NCBI GenBank assembly: GCA_977020255.1
Contig: CDROCS010000998.1
Span: 1 to 64,000 of the forward strand
Direction of reading: 5' to 3'
Origin: Obrimoposthia wandeli
Lineage: Eukaryota
Length of the DNA: 64,000 nucleotides
In this document: one piece after another, positions 50,216 to 64,000 of the stretch
Layout: each line of letters opens with the position of its first letter
Position numbering within the stretch: position 1 is the stretch's first letter
Translations under genes and position numbers: made by a program
Notes under the pieces: generated by a model
Told to the model about the DNA's origin: nothing
Seen by the model: only the letters and a program-made list of their open reading frames with translations
Databases searched by the model: none

Positions 50216-50216
50216 A

Positions 50217-50513
50217 TCATTCCCCTGGTCGTGGCTTCTTAATTCCCGATACCTTTGCACGACCACTTGCCACATCTTCACCTCGCCCCGTTAAGGTCGC
50301 GATGTAAGTGGAACCTAGCTTTTCAAGTGTGACTAACCCTAGTTCACTCAACCATTCCAGCTCTGCTCGTAGTGCGTCTCGGCTAATATCTAAGCCATAG
50401 CGGTCTAAGCCATCTTGAATAATTGATTCATTCAAATCATATCCAGGTACTTCAGACAGCAAACGCAAAATGACAAGCCGCTGGTGCTCGCGCAGAATTT
50501 GAGTAATCGCCAT
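50217..50513 (-). CDS. Mu gp26-like winged-helix protein
   Basis: RL.ILRLL.E.PGY..NES, L.WL.E.GLV, G.DVA.GRA.V.GI..P.P. Confidence 0.85.
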   Translation of the reverse strand: MAITQILREHQRLVILRLLSEVPGYDLNESIIQDGLDRYGLDISRDALRAELEWLSELGLVTLEKLGSTYIATLTGRGEDVASGRAKVSGIKKPRPGE

Positions 50514-50851
50514 TATTTTTGCTCCTTTCTAAATTCGTTTTCGTACAACATGGCGAGGCGGTTTTCGATATTGCTTATCGAGCTTAAAATCGCTTCGTTT
50601 TGGGTGCTAACCTTGACTAAGCGGCGGTCGGTTTCGTGCCAATCGTCTTTCGATGGCGCTGCTGCGATCGCTTTTTCCACATCGGCTACACGATCTTCCA
50701 GTTTCTTCTGCTCTGCCTTTGTCGCGAAGCGGTTTGAAAGCCAGGCAAACACCCCAGCCCCAACAAGACCACCCGCCACTACCACAACGGGCCACCATGT
50801 TTTTATCAGTTCACCGTCCATGTTTACCTTTCTTTTCTTTAATCGTTTCAC
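50513..50851 (-). CDS. Mu gp25-like membrane protein (DUF2730)
   Basis: Single TM followed by RFATKAE...LE.RV..VE coiled coil. Confidence 0.75.
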   Translation of the reverse strand: MKRLKKRKVNMDGELIKTWWPVVVVAGGLVGAGVFAWLSNRFATKAEQKKLEDRVADVEKAIAAAPSKDDWHETDRRLVKVSTQNEAILSSISNIENRLAMLYENEFRKEQK

Positions 50852-51038
50852 ACGGCACGCATCGCACGGCCTCTGGCGTTTTTTCTGTCCGCCTTGGATC
50901 TATCTTGCTTGTACAACCTAAGCAATAACGCCCCAATTCATCTTCGTCTGGTATTTCCACCGGCTTGCGCTGACGATGAATGCAGTCGGCAATATAGATA
51001 TCTGTTTCTACTGCAGCCCGATCAACTAAATCTGACAT
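50811..51038 (-). CDS. TraR/DksA C4-type zinc-finger protein
   Basis: D.VDRA...CLGC...I...R....P....C..C. Confidence 0.88.
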   Translation of the reverse strand: MSDLVDRAAVETDIYIADCIHRQRKPVEIPDEDELGRYCLGCTSKIDPRRTEKTPEAVRCVPCETIKEKKGKHGR

Positions 51039-51076
51039 GCTCTATTCCTTGTGTCGCTACGCCTTAAATAGCCAGC

Positions 51077-51625
51077 CTACGTGGCTGTTCCCTGACCTTT
51101 TTCTCGGTGGCGAATACCCATATAGGCCGTTGCCAACGCGAACATGAACCCTGTGATAACCATGTCGGGTCCATCGCCTTTTCCAAATGCCTGCAGTGCT
51201 TCAGATCCAATCACGTAAATCGAACCAGAAATAGCACTGATATAGGCCAGATTCGGGCGGCATGCGGCCACTTTTTTACTTTGTGATTTATCGCCAACCT
51301 GAATGGTTTGCTGTCCGGTCGCGAAAATGGTTTCTTCATGCTCTAGCTGGCGGGCTTCGCGTTCGGCTTCAATTTTTGCCAGTTCGACCTGCACCTTACC
51401 CATGCGTTCTAGCTCTTGTGGCGATAGCTTATTCAGCTCGTTGACCACGTGCTTTTGCTTCACTTCAAACGGGGCGATGGATTTGTCGATCTGCTCAATT
51501 TTGTCGGCCATTCGCACTGCAGTTTCGCTGGCACTGTCGCCAAACATTCCACCGACGGTTTTGATCAATGTCGGCCCAGCTGAGAGCAGTGTTTTTGCTA
51601 ATCCGAAAATGGTGAATGGGTCCAT
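51077..51625 (-). CDS. Holin (3TM type)
   Basis: Follows the putative endolysin; RPNLAYIS and AYMGIRHREK C-terminal motifs. Confidence 0.7.
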   Translation of the reverse strand: MDPFTIFGLAKTLLSAGPTLIKTVGGMFGDSASETAVRMADKIEQIDKSIAPFEVKQKHVVNELNKLSPQELERMGKVQVELAKIEAEREARQLEHEETIFATGQQTIQVGDKSQSKKVAACRPNLAYISAISGSIYVIGSEALQAFGKGDGPDMVITGFMFALATAYMGIRHREKGQGTAT

Positions 51626-51668
51626 TGCTGCGATACTCCTAATAATGAATGTTGTATGCCAGCAACGG

Positions 51669-52091
51669 CTATGCGCTGATGATTTCTAGCTGCCATTCCT
51701 TGCCACCTAAAAAGGTCATCATTTTGTTGAATGCCTCGGTCGAGTTCATTACTGCCCACTCACCATAACTGACGCCAAAGTGTGTGCCTGGTGCGAGGCA
51801 GCCTTGCAGTTCATTGGCTCGGTTGGCTTTGTGGAATAAACAGTGAATACGTAGGCTTGGCCCATAACGGGTGACACCTAACGTCGGTGCTTCGAGCGCA
51901 TAGCAGGTGCCAAATTTAGGGCTTTGATGCGGGATGAGTTTGTAATTACCTTTGGGCACGCAAGAGATGCTGGGCTTGTTGTTATCCCATTCACGCTCGA
52001 CGATGCAGCACAGCTGTTCGCCATTTTGGGTATGGAGTGTTGAGTAAGTACCGTGATCGAAGTGGCGACGTTTTAGGGTGAGGGTGTTCAT
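51669..52091 (-). CDS. DUF5675-family putative endolysin
   Basis: W..N....SC.P.G.Y, H.AN...LQGC..PG motifs. Confidence 0.8.
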   Translation of the reverse strand: MNTLTLKRRHFDHGTYSTLHTQNGEQLCCIVEREWDNNKPSISCVPKGNYKLIPHQSPKFGTCYALEAPTLGVTRYGPSLRIHCLFHKANRANELQGCLAPGTHFGVSYGEWAVMNSTEAFNKMMTFLGGKEWQLEIISA

Positions 52092-52094
52092 TAG

Positions 52095-52169
52095 CCATCC
52101 CTGTAAAATATGTGATTACAGGGATGGTATGGGAGGCGCGGGGTTTACTGGGTTGGAAGGGGTTCGGGA
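52095..52169 (-). promoter_or_regulatory. Putative late (lysis) promoter and RBS-sequestering hairpin
   Basis: Perfect 12-bp inverted repeat at 52095-52106 / 52116-52127 directly upstream of the ATG; TCCCGAACCCCTTCCA at 52154-52169. Confidence 0.55.
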
Positions 52170-52307
52170 TTAATATGGCGTGGCAAATTACATCAAAGAA
52201 GCATCTGCGTTATTATCACACGCTCTCAGATGATTTATTAGAACTCAGAAACTGTAATAAAACATGCTCCTCGTCTCTTCATTGCGAGAAAGACAAGGAG
52301 CAAGCAA

Positions 52308-53150
52308 TTACTTGACGAACTTAAGAAGGTCAGAAAAACTTTTCGCTATAAAACACGGTTTCGTGTCATTCAAAGCAAGTTTTAACTCTTCTTCTCTCTT
52401 CACATCTTCATCAGTCCAGTGAGTTATTGAAACCAGTAACTTCCAAAAATCGGGATTATGCTGCTTACCATACTCAGCCCAAACAGAAGTAACTCCAGCA
52501 GTATTTGCCATGGCAATGTCTTTTACAATCGAATCACCAATGTAAACCGCATCGCTCATATGAACACCTTCCTTTTCACAAATCTGTTTCAACAAATGAG
52601 GATTAGGTTTTCGATCACTTTCATCAAGAAGTTGAAGGTATTCACCTTGTTCATTTAACCAATTGAGGGATCTTTCATCTAGCTCATGATGAAACCTGTC
52701 CCTTGGTGCGTATAAATGTGTAAAGAAGTCTTTAAGCCCCAACTTTTCAAGCCTGTAAAGAGCATTTCTAACTGGCGCTTCCGTATGCGCTACTAACTTA
52801 ACATCTTTAGATTTCAGAGCGTTCAAAGTATCAATAACACCGTCATAACACTTTAAACTATCTAAACGGGCTCTATTAAATGCATGAAACGCTGAATCAA
52901 TTTTTCCCTTGATCAATTCATCACTAGACGTTTCAAAATATTCAATTAAAGATGGAAGCTCCAATACCGCCCAAGGATGTTCAGCATTACCATGCTTCTG
53001 ATGAACGGACTTAAAATCTGCTAATAATTTATCACGAGAAATTCCCGTGATACATATCAGTTCTTCCAGCATTGCAGTGAAGGAAATTGAGTAATAACTG
53101 ATCCAATCGTATAGCGTATTGTCTAAGTCTGTAATTATTAATTTCTTCAT
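52308..53150 (-). CDS. HAD-superfamily phosphatase
   Basis: TDLDNTLYD (DxDxT), RKPNP, IGDSIVKD. Confidence 0.88.
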   Translation of the reverse strand: MKKLIITDLDNTLYDWISYYSISFTAMLEELICITGISRDKLLADFKSVHQKHGNAEHPWAVLELPSLIEYFETSSDELIKGKIDSAFHAFNRARLDSLKCYDGVIDTLNALKSKDVKLVAHTEAPVRNALYRLEKLGLKDFFTHLYAPRDRFHHELDERSLNWLNEQGEYLQLLDESDRKPNPHLLKQICEKEGVHMSDAVYIGDSIVKDIAMANTAGVTSVWAEYGKQHNPDFWKLLVSITHWTDEDVKREEELKLALNDTKPCFIAKSFSDLLKFVK

Positions 53151-53152
53151 AA

Positions 53153-54796
53153 TCAATCCAGTATAAACTCAATGGGTTCTGCCATTTTTATCCAGCTGTT
53201 ATTCTTAATTTCATGGAATTGGATTTTAATATACTCACCCGTAAAATCTAATTCTGCCATTTGATTAGGATGTCCCTCTACTCGATGACCATCACTAACA
53301 CCTGTACTACCAAGCCCTACAATCCAAATGGATTTCATCTCATTATCCACGGCTTGACTCAACTTCATTACACTTCTTTCATGGGTATGCCCATGAAGTA
53401 CAGCATCCACTTTATTTTTAATGCACCAATCAATAGTAGCTTGAGCATCATAAACAACGCTTCCCTGCATTCCATACGTTGGCTTTCTAGCATACTCAAC
53501 AGGAATAAGATTATGGTGCAAAACTACAATCCGGATTGCACCAAAAGCTTTTTCTTTTGACCAACCAAGCCTCTTCCGAGCATCATTTCTTTGATCTTGC
53601 CCGATAAAACCTTGCCCCTGGAATAGATACTTATACTGTTCTACAGTGTTCGTATTTAAGAAGCAAATATCGACTGGACGCTGATTATTAATCAGATATT
53701 TTCGCCCCATTGAAAGATATTCATTAGCTTTTGCTGATGTAATTGCTTTAAAATGGTTTTCGTAAGCACTTTTGTTGATTTGACTTGTTTCAGCCATCTT
53801 AATAGATAGCTTATCTTCCGGTGTTAAATCAACGCCCTTCTTTCCTTGCTGAATCGAATGCAATTTATCAATCGCAGTTAAAAGATCTTGAGGTAATTCC
53901 TCAGAAAACATAACATCATGATTTCCAGGGCAGAATCCAATTTTAGACTTATCAAGCCCAACCTTTGAGCCTAGAAACGAGTAAAAGTCTTCAACTTGCT
54001 TGAATTCACTAGTACTACTTTTCCATGTCATATCACCGGAAACGATCAAGGACTGAAGTTCACCTTCAAACTTTTCAGCGACAAGCTCTTTCAACTGCGT
54101 TGCGGTTTTTTTATCATTAAATTGATGGAAATCTTCCACATCCGAAAAGTGTAGATCTGTAACCCAATGAATTTTTGAACCACTCAATTTAGTATAGTTT
54201 GATGAAAAATCCTCCGGAGTAGCTACATTCGCATTAATGAGCAAGATTTCTTTAGTTGATTGTCCTTTTTCATACTCTTTCACGAACCAAACAGTTCTAT
54301 CCTGATGCTGTAACTCATCCAAGCTGGATACTTGCTTATTACGGAAATCTTCAAAAAATTCCGTCTTGTCTGCAAACAGACCAAAGTCACTATCACAGTA
54401 GCTAAACTGATGTAACTCAGCTTCAACATCAGCGCCATCAACTTTATTAATATCCTTAAATCTGAACCACGTTTTAAAACCACGTGACTCTCTGTAATAT
54501 TCAGGACATGCATCTGGTGTTGGGCATGCTTCTCCAGCTTCCCCTCTGGCGATAAATGTATCTAAAAGCTCAGCTTTGTATAATTGTTTTGTCCCTGTAT
54601 CGAAAAGATAGACAAATTCAAATTCGACTTCTTTTTCAAGCATTTTACGGAAAATACTTGGAATTCTTTCATGAGGTTTCGCCCACCAGCCCCAATAAAC
54701 ATATTCTTGTAATTGACTAATCTCTTGATGTTTTTTTATTGTGTCTCCCTCAGGGGTGACCAAATCTCTAAATCGTAAAATGATTGCTTTTGCCAT
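53153..54796 (-). CDS. Calcineurin-like metallophosphoesterase with ~210-aa N-terminal domain
   Basis: TDLHF, SGDM, PGNHD, LHHN, HGHTH: all five metal-binding motifs. Confidence 0.88.
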   Translation of the reverse strand: MAKAIILRFRDLVTPEGDTIKKHQEISQLQEYVYWGWWAKPHERIPSIFRKMLEKEVEFEFVYLFDTGTKQLYKAELLDTFIARGEAGEACPTPDACPEYYRESRGFKTWFRFKDINKVDGADVEAELHQFSYCDSDFGLFADKTEFFEDFRNKQVSSLDELQHQDRTVWFVKEYEKGQSTKEILLINANVATPEDFSSNYTKLSGSKIHWVTDLHFSDVEDFHQFNDKKTATQLKELVAEKFEGELQSLIVSGDMTWKSSTSEFKQVEDFYSFLGSKVGLDKSKIGFCPGNHDVMFSEELPQDLLTAIDKLHSIQQGKKGVDLTPEDKLSIKMAETSQINKSAYENHFKAITSAKANEYLSMGRKYLINNQRPVDICFLNTNTVEQYKYLFQGQGFIGQDQRNDARKRLGWSKEKAFGAIRIVVLHHNLIPVEYARKPTYGMQGSVVYDAQATIDWCIKNKVDAVLHGHTHERSVMKLSQAVDNEMKSIWIVGLGSTGVSDGHRVEGHPNQMAELDFTGEYIKIQFHEIKNNSWIKMAEPIEFILD

Positions 54797-54948
54797 AATC
54801 CAGAACCTACCGTTATTGTTTTGACGGAATTCTAGCAAGTCTTATTTTTTATGTCTTTGAATATATTAAATATACATTTCACATAAGAATTACAGCATTG
54901 TGATAAAGTTCTCATTCAAGCTCGTATTTATAAAGTAGTACTAATTAT

Positions 54949-55368
54949 CTAAAATAACGCTCTCTGCCTACGCTGAACTTCTGCCAAGCGCTGACCTCGC
55001 ACTATTTGAGTTACCTGCCGCTCGGTCAGTTTATGCCGAGCGGCAAGCTGTTCAATGTTACGGCCATTAAATTCACGCCAAATGTCGATATTACGAAGAG
55101 CGGATTTCAGCTTAGAACCATTGGGGATGTAGATATCACGCCCACCGAAGTAATGGCCTAGGGCAATGGTGAGTTTATCGGCTAGGTGGGGCTCATCAAC
55201 CTTGGCACGTTTCAGCTCACTATTTAGCACTTCACTCAATGACTGCAAGGTGGAAGGCCAACGCTTGCGCACGTTGTCGTCAGAAATTTCAGTAACACTA
55301 TCTAGCAACAACTCAAGTTCTGAGGTTTCCGTTTTGAAAATCTCATGCTGCTGTTCCATTGCTGTCAC
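54949..55368 (-). CDS. Mor/C-family transcription activator
   Basis: HYFGGRDIYIP...RNIDIWREFNGRN..QLA..HKLTERQV.QIV. Confidence 0.9.
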   Translation of the reverse strand: MTAMEQQHEIFKTETSELELLLDSVTEISDDNVRKRWPSTLQSLSEVLNSELKRAKVDEPHLADKLTIALGHYFGGRDIYIPNGSKLKSALRNIDIWREFNGRNIEQLAARHKLTERQVTQIVRGQRLAEVQRRQRALF

Positions 55369-55445
55369 CCTGAATTAATTTCGATCTCTCTATTTAGCTA
55401 TACGATTGTTCTTCTGGTCAATACAAGGCTTCCGGGCGGGGATAA

Positions 55446-55469
55446 AAAAACGCCTTAAACGGCGTTTTT
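55446..55469. terminator. Bidirectional terminator-like hairpin upstream of mor
   Basis: AAAAACGCC-TTAAAC-GGCGTTTTT. Confidence 0.55.
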
Positions 55470-55650
55470 CTTCCTCTAGGTCATTCCCCTAGCACTCATC
55501 CATAAACTGTTCTGATTCTCCGTAACCATCAGATGAGAGCGAATAGCTGTCGTAACTTGTTCACTCATCATCTAAAGAAAAGCCCACAAAGAAATGAACG
55601 GGGAAATCCCGTAAAAACTGCCGTTCGTTACGGATCACCTTGATTATTTT

Positions 55651-56694
55651 TTACGAGTGTTCTTCTTTATTTGTTAATAACTTTGTTCTGCTATGCTCCA
55701 GCAACTTGTCTTTAAATAAATCACCAACATCGTGTACTTGATCATTAATCTCAATTGTTGGCTGATCACCTAACAACAAGTCAAGTTGGCGTGCTATTTT
55801 CTTCGTTGCAGAGTTTAACTGGTCGTTAATTTCGGTAGTGTTATAACCATTTTTTTCAAGCTGCTCTGAGATTTTCAAGAGATCATTTACCGCAGTAACA
55901 GAGCTTGGTAATTGTTTCAACTGTCCCGTTTCAGTAAAGCTCTCAAGATAATAAGCAGATGCTGAGTTGAGGATCGTCGTCAACACTGTTGCTGTCAAAG
56001 CATGCCCAGCAACCTTAACCCATAAGCTACCATTTTCGATATGCTCAATAACTATTGGATTATCCGTTATTGATACATCAAACAAATGGCATATTTCAAG
56101 GTATATGGCATCAATCGCTTCTAATTTCAGACCAAAAGCCTTCAGAGTGCTTACGTTAGATAAATAGAGCTCTAATTGAGTCAATTCACCACTATCAGCT
56201 TTGCTCTCAGCATTTGAAAGCAGTAAGTCGATTGAGAAAACTAGGTTTTCTACATTGCTTGCAAGATTTTCCGAAGCAAATGACAATCGATATAGCATCT
56301 CTGGTTGGAAGTTAGTACGGTAATTTTCATATACGTCTAAGAAAGCCTCTAAATTTACCAAAAATTTATTCAAGATAACGTATATCGTTTGATTAGCATC
56401 TATCTGATTTAAAAACTCTCTAATAGAATCTTCGATTTCATAACAGTTAACAATTAGCTTACGGTAAGTGACCTTGCTTTTTTCCTTAGCAATAGCTTGA
56501 GTAACTATATTTGTTATTTGGTTACGTTGAATTTGTCCATTCTGGGTCTCACCAAACGTCTGGTAGCTAATTGATTGAACAGCCTTTGCTGTAGCACTCA
56601 GATCTGCACATATACCTAAAAGACTATTAAACCTTTCTCCCTGCAACTCTTTCTTCAAACTCTTAAGGGATCTATAAAACGCTCTCTTATTCAC
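55651..56694 (-). CDS. Hypothetical AT-rich cargo protein (347 aa)
   Basis: GTG start with GAGGT RBS; no family recognised. Confidence 0.7.
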   Translation of the reverse strand: MNKRAFYRSLKSLKKELQGERFNSLLGICADLSATAKAVQSISYQTFGETQNGQIQRNQITNIVTQAIAKEKSKVTYRKLIVNCYEIEDSIREFLNQIDANQTIYVILNKFLVNLEAFLDVYENYRTNFQPEMLYRLSFASENLASNVENLVFSIDLLLSNAESKADSGELTQLELYLSNVSTLKAFGLKLEAIDAIYLEICHLFDVSITDNPIVIEHIENGSLWVKVAGHALTATVLTTILNSASAYYLESFTETGQLKQLPSSVTAVNDLLKISEQLEKNGYNTTEINDQLNSATKKIARQLDLLLGDQPTIEINDQVHDVGDLFKDKLLEHSRTKLLTNKEEHS

Positions 56695-57107
56695 GAATAC
56701 CTCTTTTTATTTCGATCCGATACTTTATATTAAACGATCTAAGATCGTATACCTCCCTATGTTACCAGACACTTACAGGTAAAAATCACAAAAACCGTCC
56801 AAACATTCTTTAGGTACGCTAAGTGCCCAATTAGGTACCAAAAATAGCTTTTCCAGCCCCTCATAAGCTCGTTAAGTCCATTAATCGATCTAACCCACGC
56901 TGATATAACCCTAAACACGATTGAAAGTTTGTGACGATTTCTGGGCAACTTACATTCATTGAACAGGCAAAAACAATTTAAGTGAAAAATGTTCTGAAGT
57001 GCGCGTTTTGTCACCTTTACTGTTTGCTAAATAACCGCCCGAAAGCGGTTTATCATTAATCCACATACTGCTGCGAATGTTGCGCCTCTGACGCGATGGC
57101 TAATGAT

Positions 57108-57671
57108 TCACTCATCCTTCACCGCCTTCTGTTGCACCATCATAAATTGATACCCTTCGACCACGGCTTTATATCCGGCGAGCCCTGTACCGTTTCGATT
57201 GAGCGGTACTGCCCACCCTACTTCTTTCATTCGGTCGGCAAGTTCTCGCTTATGCCAGTTTTTGAGTGATTCCAATACGGTGTACGCCTGCTTGGCATCA
57301 CACCAGCCAATATGTTCAACACCTTCGCCTTTGTTCCTATTGGTTATACGGCGAACGTAAGCATCCAGTGCCGATTCACTGCGATCACGCACAATGTCGT
57401 GCTGGGCCATGGTGATCCAGATAGCGCGGGTTTTGTCGATTTCTGTATGCTTGGCTTTGCCTGCTTTGGGGCTTAAACGTCGTTTAACTGCACGTTTAAA
57501 GCCTTGAATTTCCATTACTGCCAGCACGAGTTCTAGCTGTTTGATGTTCATTTTGCTACAGCTGGAATGCTCACCATTGGCAAACAGTAAAGCGCGGTAC
57601 GTATCGTCATCTAGTGCTAGCTCTCGCTTGCCGACATGAATCAGTTGTATTAGGCGATTTCGATTTTCCAT
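57108..57671 (-). CDS. Mu gp16/GemA-like protein (DUF1018)
   Basis: LIQLIHVGKRELALDDDTYR, ALDAYVRR, LESLKNW. Confidence 0.9.
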   Translation of the reverse strand: MENRNRLIQLIHVGKRELALDDDTYRALLFANGEHSSCSKMNIKQLELVLAVMEIQGFKRAVKRRLSPKAGKAKHTEIDKTRAIWITMAQHDIVRDRSESALDAYVRRITNRNKGEGVEHIGWCDAKQAYTVLESLKNWHKRELADRMKEVGWAVPLNRNGTGLAGYKAVVEGYQFMMVQQKAVKDE

Positions 57672-57748
57672 ATTTAACCCTAAATTCAGTGTGTACGAAG
57701 CCCCACGCGGGGGCGTGTAATTTCTGAAACTTTATTTATTCATCGATT

Positions 57749-57826
57749 TAGCTGCTCATCAGTACCCAGCCGCTACGCTGGATAGACATCACCCTTTTTA
57801 CTGCTTTAACAAGGGCGATGTTTCGC
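57749..57826 (-). ncRNA. Type II hammerhead ribozyme
   Basis: GC-GAAA-stem III (10 bp)-GUC-stem I (8 bp)-CUGAUGA-GC; loop I UAGC can pair with 3' tail GCUA. Confidence 0.85.
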
Positions 57827-57847
57827 TCATTTACTTCATTGCGCTTT

Positions 57848-58492
57848 CTACAATGCCGCTAAGTCCAACGGGATATTAATCAACTTGCCTTCACTGGTAC
57901 GCTCTCGGAAATTCAGGTACGTTTTTGAACCTGTGATCATAATGGCATCGGCGATTGCTTCCATGGCATTCATCCAACGCTGGTCGATGATTTTATCTTT
58001 GTGCTTTCGCAATGAGAGGATGCGTGCGGTGTTGAGGTTACCCTCGCGATCTACTTCAAAGGCGTCGTTCACCAGTACTTTAAGGTAGTCGTTGGCGTTT
58101 GAACTCCAGTCTTGCACGCATTCGTCTATTAGCTCTTTGGCTATCTGAAGCTCGGGGCCAAAGGTAATGCGGTCTTGCACGGTAATTTTGATTTGTTGCT
58201 TGCCGTCGTAAGCGGTGAAGGAGAAACCGCCTTTCGCGCCGCCTTTCTTTTTCTTGCTTTCGTACTTCTCGGCCAGCAACTCTTGAAAGGCATTACAATC
58301 ATCAAAGACGTCACGCTTGAACTGCCTCAGTACTGTTTGGATTTCTCGTGCTTTAGCCGTGTGTTTAATCACGAAATCATTTATTTCCATGTCATAGTCA
58401 TCAACCATTGTGATTGGCACCATGCGCTGTTTGCTGTCAAACATGTAGCCTTCTGGTGCTGCCGCCGTTGGTTGTACTTCTGGGGTATTCAT
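57848..58492 (-). CDS. DUF3164-family protein
   Basis: GGAKGGFSFTAYDG, I.FGPELQIAK.LIDEC, AF.VD.EG.LN, I.D.RW..AM.AI. Confidence 0.88.
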   Translation of the reverse strand: MNTPEVQPTAAAPEGYMFDSKQRMVPITMVDDYDMEINDFVIKHTAKAREIQTVLRQFKRDVFDDCNAFQELLAEKYESKKKKGGAKGGFSFTAYDGKQQIKITVQDRITFGPELQIAKELIDECVQDWSSNANDYLKVLVNDAFEVDREGNLNTARILSLRKHKDKIIDQRWMNAMEAIADAIMITGSKTYLNFRERTSEGKLINIPLDLAAL

Positions 58493-58506
58493 TCAGTCAT
58501 TCCTTT

Positions 58507-58995
58507 TTAAACTGGGTTGTTGCTTTGTATAGAGCCGATGGTTTGACCCCGTAATAGACGATGGAATGCTCGGGCACTGGCATCATCTTTTGCATATTGA
58601 GCTGAGCGTGTATTGGCTCGGTACTTCTTCTTATTTGCCGTCTTTACCTTTGGCTTTTTAATCTTTTGCGTTCCACCTTCGAGCCAGTGCATGTTCTGAC
58701 AGTAATTACAGACATCGTTGGTTACCGTCCAACAAAGACGAGGCCTGTTACAGCTCTTGCACTCCACTAAAAGACCCTTTTCTTCAATAAGGCGATAAAC
58801 CCGGCAGGCTTCATTACCTCGCCTAACAAAACCTTGATCTGTTAGGTGTTTCAGTTGATAAAGAATGGCTCTGGACGTTACTTCATCAATCACTATTGAG
58901 AGCTGAGGCCGTGTTAATGGTCGTTCTTTCAGCTGCTCAACAATCCTCTCTGCTAATGTCATCGCTATGCCCTCCAGGTGACTAGGCAACCACAC
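58507..58995 (-). CDS. Hypothetical winged-helix / Zn-ribbon protein
   Basis: wHTH-like N-terminus, CKSC...CNYC. Confidence 0.55.
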   Translation of the reverse strand: MWLPSHLEGIAMTLAERIVEQLKERPLTRPQLSIVIDEVTSRAILYQLKHLTDQGFVRRGNEACRVYRLIEEKGLLVECKSCNRPRLCWTVTNDVCNYCQNMHWLEGGTQKIKKPKVKTANKKKYRANTRSAQYAKDDASARAFHRLLRGQTIGSIQSNNPV

Positions 58996-59204
58996 AATGA
59001 CGCCACCCGCATTTGCTGGGTTTGGCCCTGCGCTCGGCAGGTAATATCAAAACCCTGACACATGCCGTTAGGCCGTTCGATTTCAATGACGGGACGGATA
59101 TTGCCAATCCGTGTCGAGCGTACTTCCATGCCATTTAATACCAACCGACGCACGGCTCGGTCGATGCATTTGTTTTTTGCGACAATTCCTTTTTGCCTGA
59201 TCAT
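58965..59204 (-). CDS. Hypothetical phage protein
   Basis: 79-aa ORF coupled to neighbours, ends GC.V.W as in other Mu-like early genes. Confidence 0.55.
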   Translation of the reverse strand: MIRQKGIVAKNKCIDRAVRRLVLNGMEVRSTRIGNIRPVIEIERPNGMCQGFDITCRAQGQTQQMRVASLCGCLVTWRA

Positions 59205-59725
59205 GGTTTGCTTCTCCTTGCGTATTTACTGCTCCATAGCAACTGGTTATATCGGTTTGCCAGCCGTGACAGTTCCTTTTCCAGTAACTCGTTGAGTTTC
59301 AGGGCGTCACCTTGCGCGCTGCGTTTGACATAGGCCAGTTGGCTGTCGATGTTATAGGCTTCTTCATTGGGGCTGACTCGGACGTCGATGCGTTGCGAGT
59401 TTGCCGTGGGCTCTAGTTTTGAGTTAGGACACCCAGAGCGACAGGCTCGGTGCATTTTGACCCGCTCTCGATTAGCCGATGAAAAGGGTTTACCTTGGTG
59501 ATCGAGACATTCATCTAGCCGAATGCGGCCTTTAACCGGACATTGCACTGTGCGGTCCATCAAGCGCCCTTCTACACGGGCCTTTAATGTGTCGGTACTG
59601 CCGGAATAGATGCCTCTTATCACTTGGCTAAGCATGGAGGTGCTCACACCAAGTTCTCGGGCCAGTTTGTTCTGGGTTACCTCTGCTTTGCTTAATTCTG
59701 CCGTTATGGCCTCTAACCAATTCAT
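59201..59725 (-). CDS. XRE-HTH protein with Cys-rich domain
   Basis: LARELGVSTSMLSQV; CPVKG...C..HQ...HRAC...CP. Confidence 0.75.
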   Translation of the reverse strand: MNWLEAITAELSKAEVTQNKLARELGVSTSMLSQVIRGIYSGSTDTLKARVEGRLMDRTVQCPVKGRIRLDECLDHQGKPFSSANRERVKMHRACRSGCPNSKLEPTANSQRIDVRVSPNEEAYNIDSQLAYVKRSAQGDALKLNELLEKELSRLANRYNQLLWSSKYARRSKP

Positions 59726-60243
59726 GGGCGCAGCTCCTTGATAAAGGGATAGATGGCTCCGCTGTTTTGGCAGCGAATGCTTGAGCCCCTGATTTCTGGG
59801 TGACGCGGTCCGAGATCGCAGTTCAGGCGGAAGATGTCTCCGTCTAGCGTTGATTTACGACGTATGATCTTTGCTTTCTCCAAAGCGCGGATAAATTGTC
59901 GAGTCGTTCTCTCTCCTGATTCAGCTGTCGCTTGCAGCTCATATTGACCAAAAGTTTTCATGATCCTCATGCTGTTCCATATCCGCTGCCTGACATTCGG
60001 TTTTCGGCCTTGCCATGATCCCCATGCAGGGATTGGACGCTTGCTGATCACTCGGTATTTCATATGGCTGTACATTTCCATGTCACCTGTTGCTTCAATC
60101 CGTTTTGCGTTCTCGAACTGCCGTATATATCGCTTGGCGGCTTTGGTGGTCATTTCTGTTGCCGCCGCCAGCTTTGGCGCTGTAAAGGTGGTTCGGTGGT
60201 GAAGCTGACAAATATACGTCCATGCCAACTGTCGATTTGTCAT
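59722..60243 (-). CDS. Hypothetical (tandem winged-helix) protein
   Basis: RQRIWNSMRIMKTF, YIRQ/FIRAL repeats. Confidence 0.6.
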   Translation of the reverse strand: MTNRQLAWTYICQLHHRTTFTAPKLAAATEMTTKAAKRYIRQFENAKRIEATGDMEMYSHMKYRVISKRPIPAWGSWQGRKPNVRQRIWNSMRIMKTFGQYELQATAESGERTTRQFIRALEKAKIIRRKSTLDGDIFRLNCDLGPRHPEIRGSSIRCQNSGAIYPFIKELRP

Positions 60244-60252
60244 GTCGAACTC

Positions 60253-60969
60253 CTATACAGCAAGGCTTCTGAGGCCATGGAATGGCTGGTCGCCCCAATC
60301 ATCCAAGGTGATCAGGTCGAGGTCGTTGGCTAATGCCAATGCCTCAATTTTGGTCAGGCCGATGGTGATGCGGCGCATCTCACCATTGGTACTCTGGCGG
60401 AGGTGATCAAGCAGTTCTGGCTCGGCTTTGATGCCTTCTTCAAGCAGGTAATCCGCCATAATTTGCACATCTTCCAGATCAGCAGGTTTGAACTCAACCC
60501 ACTCTGAAATGCGGTTATAGAATTGTTTGTGCGCGCTGATACGGCGAGCAATCTGATCCATTCCGATGAGGATTACTGGGGTTTCGGTGCCGTCGTAAAG
60601 GTCACGAATGGTGTCGAGCATACGGGTGTCATTCATCAGGTAATCCGCTTCATCAATGAACAGCGGGCGCTCGTACATGCTCATTTGCTCGATAATGTAA
60701 TCGACATTTTTGCTGATGCGATGTTTCGGCTGTGCGCCAAGCTCTTCAACGATGCGGCTGGTCAGGCTTGAGGTGGTGTCGTGCGCACGGGCACTGACAT
60801 AAATGCCATTGACTTGGTTGTAGAGGTAGGTTGTGGTGGTCGTTTTACCAAACCCCGATGGCCCGTGAACTAACGCCATTCCTGGCACACCAAGGGCGCG
60901 CTGGAATAAGGTGCTGAATGCAATTTGGGTTGCAGATACATTTTTAACTGGTGCAACAACTGGTTTCAT
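60253..60969 (-). CDS. MuB-like transposition AAA ATPase
   Basis: GPSGFGKT (Walker A), LFIDEAD (Walker B), directly after the transposase. Confidence 0.9.
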   Translation of the reverse strand: MKPVVAPVKNVSATQIAFSTLFQRALGVPGMALVHGPSGFGKTTTTTYLYNQVNGIYVSARAHDTTSSLTSRIVEELGAQPKHRISKNVDYIIEQMSMYERPLFIDEADYLMNDTRMLDTIRDLYDGTETPVILIGMDQIARRISAHKQFYNRISEWVEFKPADLEDVQIMADYLLEEGIKAEPELLDHLRQSTNGEMRRITIGLTKIEALALANDLDLITLDDWGDQPFHGLRSLAV

Positions 60970-61023
60970 TGTTATGATCCTTTTGGGTTGAGTTTCTGAT
61001 AAGTTACTTTGCTCTATGGCACG

Positions 61024-63252
61024 TTATGCTTGGCGGCGACGTGCCATAATTTCCTGAATTGTTCGTTTCCCTATTTGATTTTTCTTCTGGTAATCCTCCA
61101 AAAACGCTTTCTCTTTTTCTGTTAAATCGCGCACCAGTGATTGCTCGGCTAGGTAGCGGGCTTTGTCGTGGATATTTCGATGCAGATGATTTTTCTGCTG
61201 ACTAAGCTGTGTTTCTTTCTCTTCTAGCTGTTTTCTTGCCTGCTCCAGATGCTGCAGCTCTGCCTCGCTGTAAGCCGGAACTTCTTTGGCTTTGGCTGCT
61301 TTGGTCAGACTATGCAGAGCAGGATTGTGGGTGATTTCCGATGGCTGCTTGAATGCCGATAATGTATTTCTGGCTTTGTCTGCTGCTAACGATTCAGCAT
61401 ATTGGGTATCGATTCCGAACTCGTTTTGCAGCTTCTTGGCACTACGGCGGAACTCACCTAATACTTTGCTCTGCTGTTTGCGCTGCTCTCGGAAGGTTGT
61501 CGGGTCAATAGAACGGCCAACCAAATCGATGTTCACGGCTTCTATAAAGCGGTCCCAGTTTTCAATCGGATATAACGTGGCACGTCCGACATCGTTGGGA
61601 TCAAGGAACACTCGTACTCGCTTGCGATCCCAATCTGGATTCATTAACTCTGGCGCGGTGTATTTGATGCTACTCGCAGAGACACGCCCTCGGATCACGG
61701 TTGCATCACCGATGTAGTTAAGCAGGTAATCTAGACTGTGTTCATCGGCGACGAGACATGGTCGATAACCGGATTCTGTGTAGACTTGGAACGGCGTTTT
61801 CCCATTAAGTCCTTCACGCGCGGTGTGGTTATAGCGGTGCTCTAGCCAATCATTCATCACTTCTTCAAGCTCATCGGGTGTTAACGCTAATTCCAGTGCT
61901 TCTTGCTGGGCCTTCTTTTTTCCATCACCAATTCGCTGGGCAAACGCTTTGGCCGCTTCAATTTTCTGGCGGTCTGAGACTGAGTGACCTATATAACCGG
62001 GTAGCAACTCGAAGAGTCCTTGGCTCAGAGTGCGAAAGAAGCGCTCTATGTAGGGTTTCTCCCAACCAGAAAACGGATTTGCTCTAGATTGGTCGATACC
62101 AAGCATGTCGAATATGGCGGTAACGCGTTTGGAAACGTAATCAGACCCGTTATCGGTTCGGGCGATGCCGCCTTCGTTGGGTACACCCCAATCCATTAGG
62201 CATTTGCGGAGGAGTAGGCAGATCCCTTCTGAGCTGGAGGTGGGCGATAGCAGTAATTTGACCCGACGGGTATAGACATCAATGGCTGCAATAATGCTGT
62301 AGCGAACCAATTTGCCGTTAACCCGCAACTGTACATCGGTTGGAGTGCTATCAAACTCCCAACAGTCGTTCGGGGCTTGCACCCATGGGTACATTTTCCC
62401 GAATAAAGGTCGGTGCTTGTTGTTATAGGCATCAGGGTTAGTGAGGTAGGTAAATTTAGCGCCATTATCTGCCATCCATTTATTAACCCAGCGACCAATT
62501 GATGAAGAGCTCGGTATATCCCAATGCGGGTAACTTTCGAGTTTTTCTTCAATCATTCGATGCAGCACATGTGGACGCTGCGCCATATGTGGTTTACCTG
62601 TTATTACAGCCAACAGATAATTTTGAAGATCGGGCTGTTGCTCAATTTTCCCCTGCCGTTTATTGGCGGAATAATTCCCTGCCAGTCGTGTCATGCCTGA
62701 TTCATCAAGTAATTCAGCCCAGCGACGACAGGTGCGCCAACTGATCTGCTTAATCGCGTTATAGACCCAGCTGTCGATACCGAGTTTTTTCTGGTTGTAC
62801 TCCTCTACGAACTGACGCTCACCAACAGTCAGACTGTTCACGTCGATGTATGGTTGTAGGTACAATTCGCGGGCTTTTAATATCACCAGTTTGGCATTGG
62901 CTTTGGTTTGCTGTTCTCCTGTCAGGCTGTTAAATGCCATTAAGGATTGAGCTTTGCGCTTTTGCTTACCTTTCACGTCGAGCTTTTCATTAAGCGCGAT
63001 GCTTTTGACTGCCTGCTCTCCTTCAATGGCTGCGGTATCTGTTTGGCATAGCGTCTCAATTTCCTGCTTGGCTAAATAAGCACGGGTTTGATCTGGTAAG
63101 CTACTGATGTGATATTCAAATCCTTTTCCTTTTTGTTTTTTTCTCGATTTCCATTCTTCCCTTTCAGCCCGTCGTCTTACCGAAAAAGACGCATTCGGTA
63201 ACCCAGGGGATTCTGATAGTTCTGAGGCGGTGTACCATTCTTTACTCACCAT
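61024..63252 (-). CDS. MuA-like DDE transposase
   Basis: N-terminal Mu-type HTH (WYTASEL...GLP), WEFDST, TDNGSDY, KPYIERFF. Confidence 0.95.
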   Translation of the reverse strand: MVSKEWYTASELSESPGLPNASFSVRRRAEREEWKSRKKQKGKGFEYHISSLPDQTRAYLAKQEIETLCQTDTAAIEGEQAVKSIALNEKLDVKGKQKRKAQSLMAFNSLTGEQQTKANAKLVILKARELYLQPYIDVNSLTVGERQFVEEYNQKKLGIDSWVYNAIKQISWRTCRRWAELLDESGMTRLAGNYSANKRQGKIEQQPDLQNYLLAVITGKPHMAQRPHVLHRMIEEKLESYPHWDIPSSSSIGRWVNKWMADNGAKFTYLTNPDAYNNKHRPLFGKMYPWVQAPNDCWEFDSTPTDVQLRVNGKLVRYSIIAAIDVYTRRVKLLLSPTSSSEGICLLLRKCLMDWGVPNEGGIARTDNGSDYVSKRVTAIFDMLGIDQSRANPFSGWEKPYIERFFRTLSQGLFELLPGYIGHSVSDRQKIEAAKAFAQRIGDGKKKAQQEALELALTPDELEEVMNDWLEHRYNHTAREGLNGKTPFQVYTESGYRPCLVADEHSLDYLLNYIGDATVIRGRVSASSIKYTAPELMNPDWDRKRVRVFLDPNDVGRATLYPIENWDRFIEAVNIDLVGRSIDPTTFREQRKQQSKVLGEFRRSAKKLQNEFGIDTQYAESLAADKARNTLSAFKQPSEITHNPALHSLTKAAKAKEVPAYSEAELQHLEQARKQLEEKETQLSQQKNHLHRNIHDKARYLAEQSLVRDLTEKEKAFLEDYQKKNQIGKRTIQEIMARRRQA

Positions 63253-63469
63253 TAGCCTCCATTAACGAAATGGATAGCGTTTTGGATAAGTCCGTCATAA
63301 TGGCTTTTGATAAACGTCTTTTGGGAAGGCGTTTTTGATCTGGTGCGAAAGTGCTAATGCAATGCAGTACGGTTCGTGGGTTGTAACCGTGAGCTATCGC
63401 CCAGCTCCTTACCGTCCAAGCACTTGCCCTTAAAGCACCTTGTAGTTGATAAGCGGTTTCTATTTCCAT
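63242..63469 (-). CDS. Ner-like DNA-binding protein
   Basis: 75 aa, first gene of the early operon, divergent from the repressor. Confidence 0.6.
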   Translation of the reverse strand: MEIETAYQLQGALRASAWTVRSWAIAHGYNPRTVLHCISTFAPDQKRLPKRRLSKAIMTDLSKTLSISLMEANGE

Positions 63470-63508
63470 TTAGTCACCCCGTGGTAATATAATGATTGCG
63501 AGTAAGTT

Positions 63509-63628
63509 TCTTATTGCGACAATAAGACGATATTGCAAACTATAAGACGCATCAAGAACAATAAGACTCTATTTTATAAATTATAAAACCCCATCGCACT
63601 ATTGTATGAAACAGATGCAATATAAGAC
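63509..63628. promoter_or_regulatory. Operator region of the lysis/lysogeny switch
   Basis: Palindrome TCTTATTG-N3-CAATAAGA (63509-63527); ATAAGAC at 63522, 63542, 63561, 63622. Confidence 0.6.
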
Positions 63629-63701
63629 GCGACCATGTGTTTTTCTTAATTTCTTAGTCCTCATGAATAATGGATTAAACCACTGATTTTTAGGTCATTT
63701 A

Positions 63702-64000
63702 ATGAAAAAGCACGTTAAAGTAGAGAAAAGCACACTAGGTGCTTTTAATAAGGACGGAATCGCACATTTTTCAGCGCGTCTAAAAGAACTAATTGGGAAT
63801 GAATCTATTCGGAGCTTTGGGGAGAGTGTCGGGATTACAGATAGTGGTTTACGAAAATACCTTCCGCCAAATAGCTCCAAGCCTACTTTTGATAAGTTGG
63901 TGGCTATTGCCGATTACAAAGGTGTTCGACTTGAATGGCTGGCGACAGGGAATGGACCTAAGTTAACAGAGTCAACTTCTCACACAATTGAACATTTTCA
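63702..64000 (+). CDS. Phage repressor (XRE HTH), 3'-truncated by window end
   Basis: Manual translation MKKHVKVEK...FSARLKELIG..SIRSFGESVGITDSGLRKYL...V.LEWLATGNG. Confidence 0.85.
   Translation, partial: MKKHVKVEKSTLGAFNKDGIAHFSARLKELIGNESIRSFGESVGITDSGLRKYLPPNSSKPTFDKLVAIADYKGVRLEWLATGNGPKLTESTSHTIEHF

What the first reader, a model, noticed from the sequence alone, without database searches (positions are those of the whole stretch)
57749..57826. Complete type II hammerhead ribozyme in the prophage early operon
Seen (minus strand): GC GAAA CAUCGCCCUU [14-nt loop] AAGGGUGAUG UC | UAUCCAGC GUAGCG GCUGGGUA CUGAUGA GC AGCUA. All catalytic core bases are present, with a 10-bp stem III, 8-bp stem I, 2-bp stem II and a 4-bp loop I-tail pseudoknot (UAGC/GCUA). 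Predicted cleavage is after the GUC, between 57785 and 57784. Established: type II hammerheads with short stem II and a pseudoknot occur in bacteria and phages. Inference: self-cleavage splits the early transcript between DUF3164 and gemA, uncoupling gemA (a host-gyrase/supercoiling modulator in Mu) from transposition genes.
Basis: partly seen in the sequence, partly recalled or inferred. Interest (0 to 1): 0.8.

Follow-up and report, generated by a model that had tools for sequence, protein, structure and literature searches.

The report
Type II hammerhead ribozyme, Mu-like prophage
The sequence really is a complete type II hammerhead self-cleaving RNA sitting between two early genes of a Mu-like prophage, but this RNA family and its link to Mu-like phages are already published, so the find is correct and ordinary.

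Summary
Confirmed. Rfam's Hammerhead_II model (RF02276) matches window 57828..57746 on the minus strand at 59 bits (gathering score 37, E 1.2e-9). It is the only Rfam hit in the window.

The element lies between DUF3164 and GemA in the early region of a Mu-like prophage (MuA, MuB ... Mor, all on the minus strand). Relatives carry it too: 46 copies (41 distinct) in Photobacterium, Shewanella and IMG/VR Mu-like contigs. In these the core is invariant except at N7 and H17, 98.8% of pair cells are paired, 19 of 25 pairs show compensatory change, and every copy lies sense and downstream of DUF3164.

Type II hammerheads with a short stem II and a pseudoknot, prophage hammerhead arrays, and the link to Mu-like phages are all published, so this is ordinary. 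The claim that cleavage uncouples gemA is plausible but untested and not specific to gemA. Two things I did not find stated in the papers read: family members usually sit directly after a stop codon and just before the next ribosome-binding site, and one sister prophage has an intrinsic terminator at the same site.

The parts
57746..57828 (-). Complete type II hammerhead ribozyme (Rfam RF02276 match, model positions 1-66)
   Evidence: 59 bits vs gathering 37, E 1.2e-9; own covariance model gives 95.7 bits; fold z = -3.67.
57825..57826 (-). Stem II, 5' strand (GC). Pairs with 57754-57755. This is the open stem that defines type II.
   Evidence: Read directly. The G-C and C-G pairs are invariant in 41/41 distinct relatives.
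57822..57824 (-). Core G12 A13 A14
   Evidence: Invariant in 41/41 relatives.
57786..57821 (-). Stem III hairpin: arms 57821-57811 and 57796-57786 (11 bp including A15.1-U16.1, one G-U pair), 14-nt loop 57810-57797. It would form the 3'-terminal hairpin of the upstream cleavage product.
   Evidence: the 44-nt upstream product end folds to -16.7 kcal/mol, z = -5.17. In relatives, 10 of 11 pairs show compensatory change.
57785..57785 (-). C17 of the GUC triplet (57787-57785). The predicted scissile bond is between 57785 and 57784.
   Evidence: Position in the Rfam alignment. H17 is C in 40 and A in 1 of 41 relatives. Cleavage itself is not shown.
57763..57784 (-). Stem I hairpin (8 bp, 6-nt loop 57776-57771). 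It would be the 5'-terminal hairpin of the downstream (gemA) product.
   Evidence: -12.1 kcal/mol. All 8 pairs show compensatory change in relatives.
57756..57762 (-). Core C3 U4 G5 A6 U7 G8 A9 (CUGAUGA)
   Evidence: Invariant in 41/41 relatives except N7 (U 35, C 5, A 1).
57754..57755 (-). Stem II, 3' strand (GC)
57772..57775 (-). Pseudoknot, loop I strand (UAGC)
   Evidence: The helix is 96.2% paired in relatives. The second pair occurs as G-C 26, C-G 7, A-U 4.
57749..57752 (-). Pseudoknot, 3'-tail strand (GCUA), one base (A57753) after stem II
57848..58492 (-). Upstream gene: DUF3164 protein (214 aa). Its stop codon UAG at 57850-57848 lies 21 nt before stem II.
   Evidence: PF11363, E 3.9e-65..
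57108..57671 (-). Downstream gene: GemA-family protein (187 aa). Its AUG at 57671 lies 74 nt after the end of the Rfam match.
   Evidence: PF06252, E 4.1e-33..
57700..57717 (-). Small G+C-rich hairpin in the spacer between the hammerhead and gemA. Two alternative registers are possible: CACGC/GCGUG or GCCCC/GGGGC. The sequence is conserved in the Photobacterium relatives. Role unknown.
   Evidence: The fold energy is not above shuffles (z = -0.85), so conservation is the only evidence.
57831..57839 (-). AUG-AAG-UAA remnant at the place where sister prophages carry a 62-aa ORF between DUF3164 and the hammerhead
   Evidence: alignment; (L012:3154-3342 ORF)
61024..63252 (-). MuA-like transposase. 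It marks the start of the early region that contains the ribozyme.
   Evidence: HTH_Tnp_Mu_1, rve, Mu-transpos_C
60253..60969 (-). MuB-like AAA+ ATPase
   Evidence: AAA_22, TniB
54949..55368 (-). Mor-family transcription activator, at the distal end of the early region downstream of the ribozyme
   Evidence: PF08765, E 7.1e-27

Best explanation
This is a genuine type II hammerhead self-cleaving ribozyme. It is encoded on the minus strand in the 176-nt gap between the DUF3164 gene and gemA, in the early region of a Mu-like transposable prophage. The host is probably a Photobacterium.

Proposed mechanism:
1. The RNA is transcribed as part of the long early transcript that starts upstream of the transposase genes.
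2. It folds into the three-way junction. The pseudoknot between loop I and the 3' tail holds stems I and II parallel, standing in for the very short stem II.
3. It cleaves itself after C57785 by internal transesterification.
4. The upstream RNA (transposase genes through DUF3164) keeps its stop codon. It ends in the 11-bp stem III hairpin with a 2',3'-cyclic phosphate.
5. The downstream RNA (gemA through mor) begins with a 5'-hydroxyl directly on the stem I hairpin.

The two halves of the operon can then be degraded and translated independently, much as the synthetic RiboJ insulator works.

What is shown: the sequence, the structure, membership of the family, conservation and covariation, and the sense orientation and position within Mu-like early regions.

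What is inferred: transcription through the site, cleavage in the cell, and any effect on the stability or expression of gemA and mor.
For: Identity:
- Rfam RF02276 at 59 bits against a gathering score of 37.
- All core bases are present.
- 46 homologous copies (41 distinct) have an invariant core except at N7 and H17, the two positions the published consensus leaves free (criteria in PMC3088659).
- 98.8% of 913 pair cells are paired, against 75.4% in shuffles and 31-43% when the partners are slid. 19 of 25 pairs show changes on both sides, and the pseudoknot covaries.

Context:
- MuA, MuB, DUF3164, GemA and Mor all lie on the minus strand, with Mu Gp27, terminase, portal and tail genes downstream.
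- No promoter-like site and no minus-strand terminator-like site occurs in 56500-59000. This is consistent with read-through transcription.

Position is conserved:
- Hammerheads occur in 5 of 9 genome loci and 27 of 80 IMG/VR loci chosen only for having DUF3164. All are sense to DUF3164 and downstream of it; none is upstream or antisense.
- In the motif-first scan, 104 of 120 IMG/VR stretches carry Mu-like early genes. Strand agreement is 363 of 363.

Intercistronic design:
- An upstream ORF's stop codon lies 0-4 nt before stem II in 35/44 and 90/150 distinct copies, against 2.3% of positions by chance.
- A ribosome-binding site plus start codon lies within 36 nt after stem II in 29/44 and 111/150.

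Literature:
- Type II hammerheads with a 2-bp stem II and a pseudoknot of 4 bp or more are fast cleavers, and prophage arrays cleave during transcription and in E. coli (PMC3088659).
- Bacterial hammerheads associate most strongly with Mu-like phage genes (PMC10085705).
- A hammerhead placed upstream of a gene in E. coli raises transcript about 2-fold and protein 2-10-fold (PMC6206723).
Against: - No expression or cleavage data exist for this locus. Transcription of the minus strand through the site is inferred from gene order only.
- 53 of 80 DUF3164-bearing Mu-like contigs have no hammerhead and no other Rfam ribozyme. The element is therefore dispensable for the Mu-like life style.
- This copy is less compact than most. 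The stop of DUF3164 is 21 nt upstream and the gemA start 74 nt downstream, so the tight coupling to stop codon and ribosome-binding site seen in the family does not apply here in full.
- The effect of a 5'-OH or a terminal hairpin on mRNA life in Photobacterium is extrapolated from E. coli knowledge.
- The covariation alignment was fitted to the model structure, which favours pairing, although the slid controls argue that the signal is real.
Confidence: 0.75

Rival explanations
1. The ribozyme is active but is a passenger. It is a small mobile or recombining cassette (ribozyme plus neighbouring small ORFs) that comes and goes in the variable distal early region of Mu-like phages. It has no specific regulatory role for gemA or mor in this prophage.
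For: - Patchy distribution: 27 of 80 DUF3164 loci have it, and even an 81%-identical sister prophage (L013) lacks it.
- Copy number varies from 1 to 3, and up to 11 in one contig.
- The genes flanked are not constant (PMC3088659 says the same).
- Loci with hammerheads have longer DUF3164-gemA intervals (median 1329 vs 855 nt), as if the cassettes bring extra ORFs.
- In this window the small ORF that normally precedes the ribozyme has been lost.
Against: - The core is perfectly conserved and the stems covary across proteins only 35-96% identical. This means purifying selection on catalysis.
- Strict sense orientation and intercistronic placement show that it works on the phage mRNA.
- Being a cassette and having a function are not mutually exclusive.
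Confidence: 0.15
2. The element acts mainly as structure and not by self-cleavage. Its two stable hairpins would serve as a pause or attenuation signal, a protein or RNase recognition site, or a barrier to exonucleases. The hammerhead core would then be incidental or vestigial.
For: - Stems III and I are stable on their own (-16.7 and -12.1 kcal/mol).
- In sister prophage L013 an intrinsic terminator occupies the same place. It has a 9-bp stem whose 3' arm equals that of stem III in L003/L004, followed by eight T.
Against: - A merely structural element would not keep all the unpaired core nucleotides invariant in 41 distinct copies while the stems change freely.
- The pseudoknot also covaries. 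The literature ties the pseudoknot to fast catalysis (PMC3088659).
- Replacement by a terminator is a single case: plus-strand terminator-like sites occur in 0/29 loci with a hammerhead and 3/28 without.
Confidence: 0.06
3. Chance resemblance: an ordinary intergenic sequence that happens to match the hammerhead descriptor.
For: Hammerhead cores are short, and relaxed descriptors are known to give false positives (PMC6155905).
Against: - E 1.2e-9 for the whole window against all families.
- The identical or homologous element sits at the same place in five Photobacterium/Shewanella genomes and in 27 IMG/VR contigs, with compensatory changes.
Confidence: 0.01

Closest known systems
Type II hammerhead ribozymes (Rfam RF02276; Perreault et al. 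2011, PMC3088659)
   Same: The same 11 conserved core nucleotides and the same topology: stems I and III closed, stem II open and only 2 bp. The same pseudoknot of 4 bp between loop I and the bases right after stem II. The same prophage setting.
   Different: Nothing essential differs. Stem III is longer than the family consensus (11 bp with a 14-nt loop, a 17-nt insertion relative to the Rfam model). The pseudoknot uses UAGC/GCUA where most relatives use UGGU/GCCA.
Multiple-hammerhead arrangements that flank genes in prophages (Agrobacterium tumefaciens ardA, Azorhizobium caulinodans, Clostridium scindens; PMC3088659)
   Same: Sense-strand ribozymes in intercistronic gaps of long phage transcripts. 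The published hypothesis is that they process such transcripts into gene-length mRNAs. Relatives of this locus have 2-3 copies flanking small ORFs.
   Different: This window has a single copy. The published examples were shown to cleave during transcription; this one was not tested.
Association of bacterial self-cleaving ribozymes with Mu-like phage genes (Roth 2014 and Weinberg 2015, as summarised in PMC10085705)
   Same: The hammerhead lies among Mu-like early genes. My own scans reproduce the association: 104 of 120 motif-found IMG/VR stretches carry Mu-like markers.
   Different: I could not read the two primary papers (not held). I therefore cannot say whether DUF3164 and GemA are among the genes they list. 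In the 80 DUF3164 loci scanned, no twister, pistol, hatchet or twister-sister was found; only hammerhead II.
RiboJ, the synthetic hammerhead-based insulator used in E. coli (PMC6206723)
   Same: It may work in the same way. A hammerhead just upstream of a cistron cuts off whatever RNA lies 5' of it, leaving a defined 5' end with a hairpin. Measured effects of RiboJ are about 2-fold more transcript and 2-10-fold more protein.
   Different: RiboJ is an engineered type III satellite-RNA ribozyme with an added hairpin. This element is a natural type II. Membership is not claimed and the effect on gemA is not measured.
Rho-independent terminators at the same position (sister prophage L013/L011)
   Same: It occupies the same slot after the small ORF. 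It is built on a hairpin whose 3' arm is identical to that of stem III in L003/L004. Both elements would create a hairpin-ended 3' terminus for the upstream RNA.
   Different: A terminator stops RNA polymerase, so the downstream genes lose their transcript. A ribozyme lets transcription continue and only separates the RNAs.

Membership tests
Hammerhead ribozyme type II (Rfam RF02276) | Covariance-model score at or above the curated gathering score | tested here: met
   59.0 bits vs 37, E 1.2e-9, full-length match to model 1-66; repeated
Hammerhead ribozyme type II (Rfam RF02276) | Conserved core: C3 U4 G5 A6 (N7) G8 A9, G12 A13 A14, A15.1-U16.1, H17 | tested here: met
   CUGAUGA at 57762-57756, GAA at 57824-57822, A57821-U57786, C57785. 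The acceptance criteria are listed in PMC3088659.
Hammerhead ribozyme type II (Rfam RF02276) | Watson-Crick pairs directly next to the core in all three stems (10.1-11.1, 1.1-2.1, 15.1-16.1) | tested here: met
   C57825-G57755 (pair 11.1-10.1), U57784-A57763, A57821-U57786
Hammerhead ribozyme type II (Rfam RF02276) | Type II permutation: stems I and III closed by loops, stem II open to the flanks | tested here: met
   Structure line of the Rfam alignment and centroid fold
Hammerhead ribozyme type II (Rfam RF02276) | Pseudoknot of about 4 bp between loop I and the nucleotides just 3' of stem II | tested here: met
   57775-57772 with 57752-57749. In 41 distinct relatives the helix is 96.2% paired, and the second pair is G-C 26 / C-G 7 / A-U 4.
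Hammerhead ribozyme type II (Rfam RF02276) | Stems supported by compensatory changes in homologues while the core stays fixed | tested here: met
   Stem III has 10/11 pairs and stem I has 8/8 pairs with changes on both sides. 0/500 shuffles reach the observed values, and slid controls give 31-43% paired. The core is invariant apart from N7 and H17. Caveat: the alignment was fitted to the model.
Hammerhead ribozyme type II (Rfam RF02276) | Site-specific self-cleavage giving 2',3'-cyclic phosphate and 5'-OH ends | not testable with these tools
   No biochemical or transcript-end data are available here.
Mu-like transposable prophage, early region | MuA-type DDE transposase with Mu DNA-binding and C-terminal domains, followed by a MuB-like ATPase, on the same strand as the element | tested here: met
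   61024-63252: HTH_Tnp_Mu_1, rve, Mu-transpos_C. 60253-60969: AAA_22/TniB.
Mu-like transposable prophage, early region | GemA and Mor downstream on the same strand, then Mu-type late genes | tested here: met
   GemA 57108-57671 and Mor 54949-55368. Mu Gp27 49634-50281. Terminase, portal, protease, tape measure and tail genes.
Mu-like transposable prophage, early region | Transcription of the whole stretch from one early promoter upstream of the transposase | not testable with these tools
   Indirect only: no promoter-like site and no minus-strand terminator-like site in 56500-59000. The 75-aa ORF in the ner position (63242-63469) has no Pfam match.
RiboJ-like insulator (functional analogy only) | Cleavage changes the abundance or translation of the downstream cistron | not testable with these tools
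   Analogy from PMC6206723. No expression data for gemA.

The most novel reading that the evidence does not exclude
The hammerhead cassette of Mu-like phages could be a translation-sensitive 3'-end and 5'-end former, and not only a passive cutter.

In most family members the stop codon of the upstream cistron directly abuts stem II, and the ribosome-binding site of the next cistron follows the pseudoknot tail. A terminating ribosome would therefore cover the 5' half of the ribozyme, and an initiating ribosome would compete with the pseudoknot. Cleavage, and hence the fate of the distal early genes gemA and mor, would depend on how the neighbouring cistrons are translated.

The sister prophage that carries an intrinsic terminator built on the same hairpin at the same site would then be an alternative solution to the same task: limiting or timing expression of the distal early genes.

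In this window the arrangement is relaxed, because the small upstream ORF has been lost. The idea therefore applies to the family more than to this copy.
Probability: 0.12. Interest if true: 0.6.

Novelty: already known. Interest (0 to 1): 0.25.

Why it matters
For genome annotation, this marks a self-cleaving RNA that standard gene calling leaves out, and it explains the 176-nt gap between DUF3164 and gemA.

Biologically it adds nothing new in kind. Type II hammerheads, their pseudoknot, their clustering in prophages and their strong association with Mu-like phage genes are all published. What these ribozymes do for the phage is still an open question (PMC6155905).

The locus and its relatives make a tidy natural series for describing that question. 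Sister prophages have the ribozyme with or without an upstream small ORF, one has a terminator in its place, and many have nothing there. The family-wide placement directly after a stop codon and just before the next ribosome-binding site is a concrete feature that transcript-end and ribosome-profiling data could examine.

Tried and rejected
1. Second or degenerate ribozymes in the same prophage. An Rfam scan with permissive filters over 50000-64000 at E<=1, and my own model over the whole window, found only the one copy.

2. Other ribozyme classes at the equivalent site in relatives. Rfam gathering scans of all 80 IMG/VR DUF3164 loci and 9 genome loci found only Hammerhead_II, apart from unrelated C4/isrK RNAs in L058 and L068.

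3. The idea that hammerhead-less phages generally have a terminator instead. Plus-strand terminator-like sites in the DUF3164-gemA interval occur in 0/29 loci with a hammerhead and 3/28 without. Only L013 is a clear case, so this is not a general rule.

4. An internal promoter for gemA. No sigma-70-like site occurs in 56500-59000 on either strand. The scan is crude and covers only one promoter type.

5. The spacer hairpin at 57717-57700 as a stable structure. Its fold energy is not better than shuffles (z = -0.85). Only its sequence conservation stands.

6. Literature. The primary papers on ribozyme-associated genes (PMC3867598, PMC4509812) are not held. Searches for 'self-cleaving' with 'DUF3164' found 0 papers. 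'Hammerhead' with 'gemA' returned only unrelated papers, mostly on sharks. 'Hammerhead' with 'Mu-like' found one paper.

7. The 'phages' collection holds only distant matches to this stretch (5 records, 69-72% identity over parts of it). No annotated phage genome was available for comparison.

8. Pfam and PHROGs gave nothing for the 75-aa ORF in the ner position, for the 62-aa small ORF of sister prophages, or for the 85-aa and 347-aa ORFs between gemA and mor.

Full report
**1. Is it there?**

Yes. The minus strand of 57828..57746 reads as a textbook type II hammerhead.
- Stem II is two G-C pairs (57826/57825 with 57755/57754).
- GAA at 57824-57822 is followed by an 11-bp stem III. The arms are 57821-57811 and 57796-57786, with a 14-nt loop.
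- The cleavage triplet GUC ends at C57785.
- Stem I is 8 bp (57784-57777 with 57770-57763) with a 6-nt loop.
- CUGAUGA lies at 57762-57756.
- In the 3' tail, GCUA (57752-57749) can pair with UAGC (57775-57772) of loop I.

Rfam's covariance models give a single hit above gathering in the whole 64-kb window. It is RF02276 Hammerhead_II at 59.0 bits against a gathering score of 37, E 1.2e-9, matching the full length of the model. A permissive rescan of 50000-64000 finds nothing else at E<=1. The 83 nt fold to -29.9 kcal/mol (z = -3.67; 0 of 200 shuffles do as well). Stems I and III survive when 221 nt of context are folded.

**2. Surroundings**

All neighbouring genes are on the minus strand.
- A MuA-type transposase lies at 61024-63252 (Mu DNA-binding domain, rve core, Mu transposase C-terminal domain).
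- A MuB-like AAA+ ATPase lies at 60253-60969, followed by three small helix-turn-helix ORFs.
- DUF3164 (57848-58492, E 3.9e-65) comes next, then the ribozyme, then GemA (57108-57671, E 4.1e-33).
- Two unassigned ORFs follow, then Mor at 54949-55368.
- Further down come Mu Gp27, terminase, portal, head protease, tape measure and tail genes.

The ribozyme is intergenic. The DUF3164 stop codon is 21 nt before stem II, and the gemA start is 74 nt after the Rfam match. A crude scan finds no promoter-like site on either strand and no terminator-like site on the minus strand in 56500-59000. This is consistent with read-through from upstream, but it is not evidence of transcription.

**3. Relatives**

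A search of one genome per species with the DUF3164 protein returned four Photobacterium loci (80-96% identity) and five Shewanella or Arenimonas loci (about 35%). The four Photobacterium loci and one Shewanella locus have a Hammerhead_II hit downstream of DUF3164.

An alignment of these proteins then pulled 80 DUF3164 loci from IMG/VR. Rfam scans of all 80 and a covariance model I built from six copies agree hit for hit.
- There are 46 matches in all: the window's own copy, 5 in the genome loci and 40 in 27 of the 80 IMG/VR loci.
- Every copy is on the DUF3164 strand and downstream of DUF3164. None is upstream or antisense.
- No other ribozyme class appeared.

A tblastn map shows that the hammerheads lie between DUF3164 and gemA. 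They come singly or as two or three copies flanking small ORFs. In one lineage (L056/L057) another copy lies right after mor.

A motif-first scan of IMG/VR used a pattern taken from the alignment. Of these, 104 carry at least one Mu-like early gene detectable with the window's own proteins, and the ribozyme is on the same strand as those genes in 363 of 363 comparisons.

**4. Is the structure under selection?**

In the 41 distinct sequences of alignment A4, every conserved core position is invariant. The only variation is at N7 (U 35, C 5, A 1) and H17 (C 40, A 1), exactly the two positions the published consensus leaves free (criteria quoted).

For the structure including the pseudoknot:
- 98.8% of 913 cells form standard pairs, against 75.4% in shuffles and 31-43% with partners slid by 1-3 columns.
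- 19 of 25 pairs show changes on both sides.
- No shuffle out of 500 reaches any observed measure.
- Stem III has 10 of 11 and stem I has 8 of 8 pairs with compensatory change.
- Stem II never varies.
- The second pseudoknot pair occurs as G-C (26), C-G (7) and A-U (4).

The alignment was fitted to the model, which favours pairing, but the size of the effect and the slid controls leave little doubt. In the near relatives L003/L004 the cleavage triplet is AUC, with the 15.2-16.2 pair changed from C-G to U-A.

**5. How it most likely works**

Shown: a catalytically complete, conserved, sense-strand ribozyme in an intercistronic gap of the early region.

Inferred: the early transcript runs through it and the RNA cleaves itself after C57785.
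- The upstream RNA keeps the DUF3164 stop codon. It ends in the stable stem III hairpin (-16.7 kcal/mol) with a cyclic phosphate.
- The downstream RNA starts with a 5'-OH directly on the stem I hairpin (-12.1 kcal/mol) and carries gemA through mor.

From general knowledge of E. coli RNA decay (not tested here), a 3'-terminal hairpin hinders 3' exonucleases, and a 5'-terminal hairpin without a monophosphate hinders RNase E entry. The two products could therefore have lifetimes independent of each other.

The closest functional analogue is the synthetic insulator RiboJ, which raises transcript about 2-fold and protein 2-10-fold for the gene behind it in E. coli (PMC6206723). The published hypothesis for prophage hammerheads is the same: long phage transcripts are processed into operon-length or gene-length mRNAs. 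Three prophage arrays were shown to cleave during transcription, and one of them also in E. coli (PMC3088659).

**6. What argues for caution**

- The function of prokaryotic hammerheads is still called an open question (PMC6155905).
- Two thirds of DUF3164-bearing contigs have no ribozyme.
- The genes flanked vary, so the link is to the distal early region and not to gemA as such.
I confirmed only the Pfam family.

**7. Comparison with the known**

Every defining feature of the type II hammerhead that sequence can test is met; the membership table lists them. Only cleavage itself is untestable here.
- The 2-bp stem II and a pseudoknot of four or more pairs between loop I and the bases just after stem II are the published consensus for type II. 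Mutational work shows that the pseudoknot is needed for fast cleavage (PMC3088659).
- A 2023 paper states that bacterial hammerhead and twister ribozymes are most strongly associated with genes of Mu-like phages (PMC10085705).

The finding is therefore a correct recognition of a known element in its known habitat. I rate it as already known in kind. This particular copy is simply an unannotated member. An identical copy is in IMG/VR (L012).

**8. Things the comparison turned up that I did not find stated in the papers I could read**

(a) The family is a tight intercistronic cassette.
- The stop codon of an open frame of at least 45 codons ends 0-4 nt before the first G of stem II in 35 of 44 distinct DUF3164-ascertained copies and in 90 of 150 pattern-ascertained copies. 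In 19 and 45 of them respectively it abuts directly. By chance, 2.3% of positions would qualify.
- A Shine-Dalgarno motif plus the start of an ORF of at least 40 codons follows within 36 nt of stem II in 29/44 and 111/150. It often comes directly after the pseudoknot tail.
- These counts are not corrected for relatedness.
- PMC3088659 contains no mention of stop codons or ribosome-binding sites.

(b) The window and L001 lack a 62-aa ORF that five sister prophages carry between DUF3164 and the ribozyme. An AUG-AAG-UAA remnant is left at 57839-57831. This copy is therefore less tightly packed than most.

(c) Sister prophage L013 (same contig as L011) has no ribozyme. At exactly that place it has a canonical intrinsic terminator: a 9-bp stem followed by eight T. 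Its 3' arm is identical to that of stem III in L003/L004. This is a single case and not a rule.

**9. Verdict**

Novelty is low. The search pattern was taken from the tool-made alignment A4.

Noticed in passing
window 38300-46240: An ~8-kb mixed-strand cargo island interrupts the late (head) genes of the prophage, between the head protease (37044-38222) and the virion morphogenesis and portal genes (46241-48063). It holds a Septu defence pair: PtuA 44072-45313(+), E 4.8e-143, and PtuB 45318-45983(+), E 2.1e-86. It also holds a PDC-S31/DUF2971 candidate (42319-43182,+) and a trio of 'cll' (38540-39298,+), Beta_protein (39313-40467,-) and an M78 peptidase/capP-like gene (40448-40948,-).
   Followed up: partly
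window 52308-54838: Directly after mor, two minus-strand genes are unusual for a Mu-like phage. One is a Pua-like domain fused to a calcineurin-like metallophosphoesterase (53153-54838). The other is a HAD-family hydrolase (52308-53156) that matches the PADLOC 'Hydrolase' model PDLC03008 at E 1e-63.
   Followed up: partly
L013:3340-3372 (same contig as L011): This sister prophage (DUF3164 81% identical) has no hammerhead. It has a canonical intrinsic terminator (9-bp stem, 7-nt loop, eight T) at the same place after the small ORF. The 3' arm of the terminator is identical to that of stem III in L003/L004.
   Followed up: partly
window 57831-57839; L012:3154-3342: The window and L001 lack the 62-aa ORF (no Pfam match) that L012, L002, L003, L004 and L013 have between DUF3164 and the ribozyme. 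Only AUG-AAG-UAA remains in the window.
   Followed up: partly
L012-L091 and L092 onward (family-wide): In most Mu-like type II hammerheads the stop codon of the upstream ORF lies 0-4 nt before stem II (35/44 and 90/150, against 2.3% by chance). A ribosome-binding site plus start codon follows within 36 nt (29/44 and 111/150). The 3' tail often reads AGCC-GAGG, so the pseudoknot strand runs straight into the Shine-Dalgarno motif.
   Followed up: partly
window 57700-57717: A G+C-rich hairpin lies in the spacer between the ribozyme and gemA. Its sequence is conserved in all six Photobacterium-type copies, and it travels with the ribozyme even where other ORFs separate it from gemA (L002, L004). 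The fold energy is not above shuffles.
   Followed up: partly
L125:2822-5862 (IMGVR_UViG_3300017605_000570, 57 kb): Eleven matches to the hammerhead pattern occur within about 3 kb on one strand, an unusually dense array.
   Followed up: no
L058:5245-5424; L068:3367-3419: Two DUF3164-bearing IMG/VR contigs carry C4 antisense RNA, isrK or c4-a1b1 matches (P1/P7-type immunity RNAs) downstream of DUF3164, where others have hammerheads.
   Followed up: no
window 55651-57014: Two minus-strand ORFs between gemA and mor (85 aa at 56757-57014, 347 aa at 55651-56694) have no Pfam, PHROGs or PADLOC match.
   Followed up: partly
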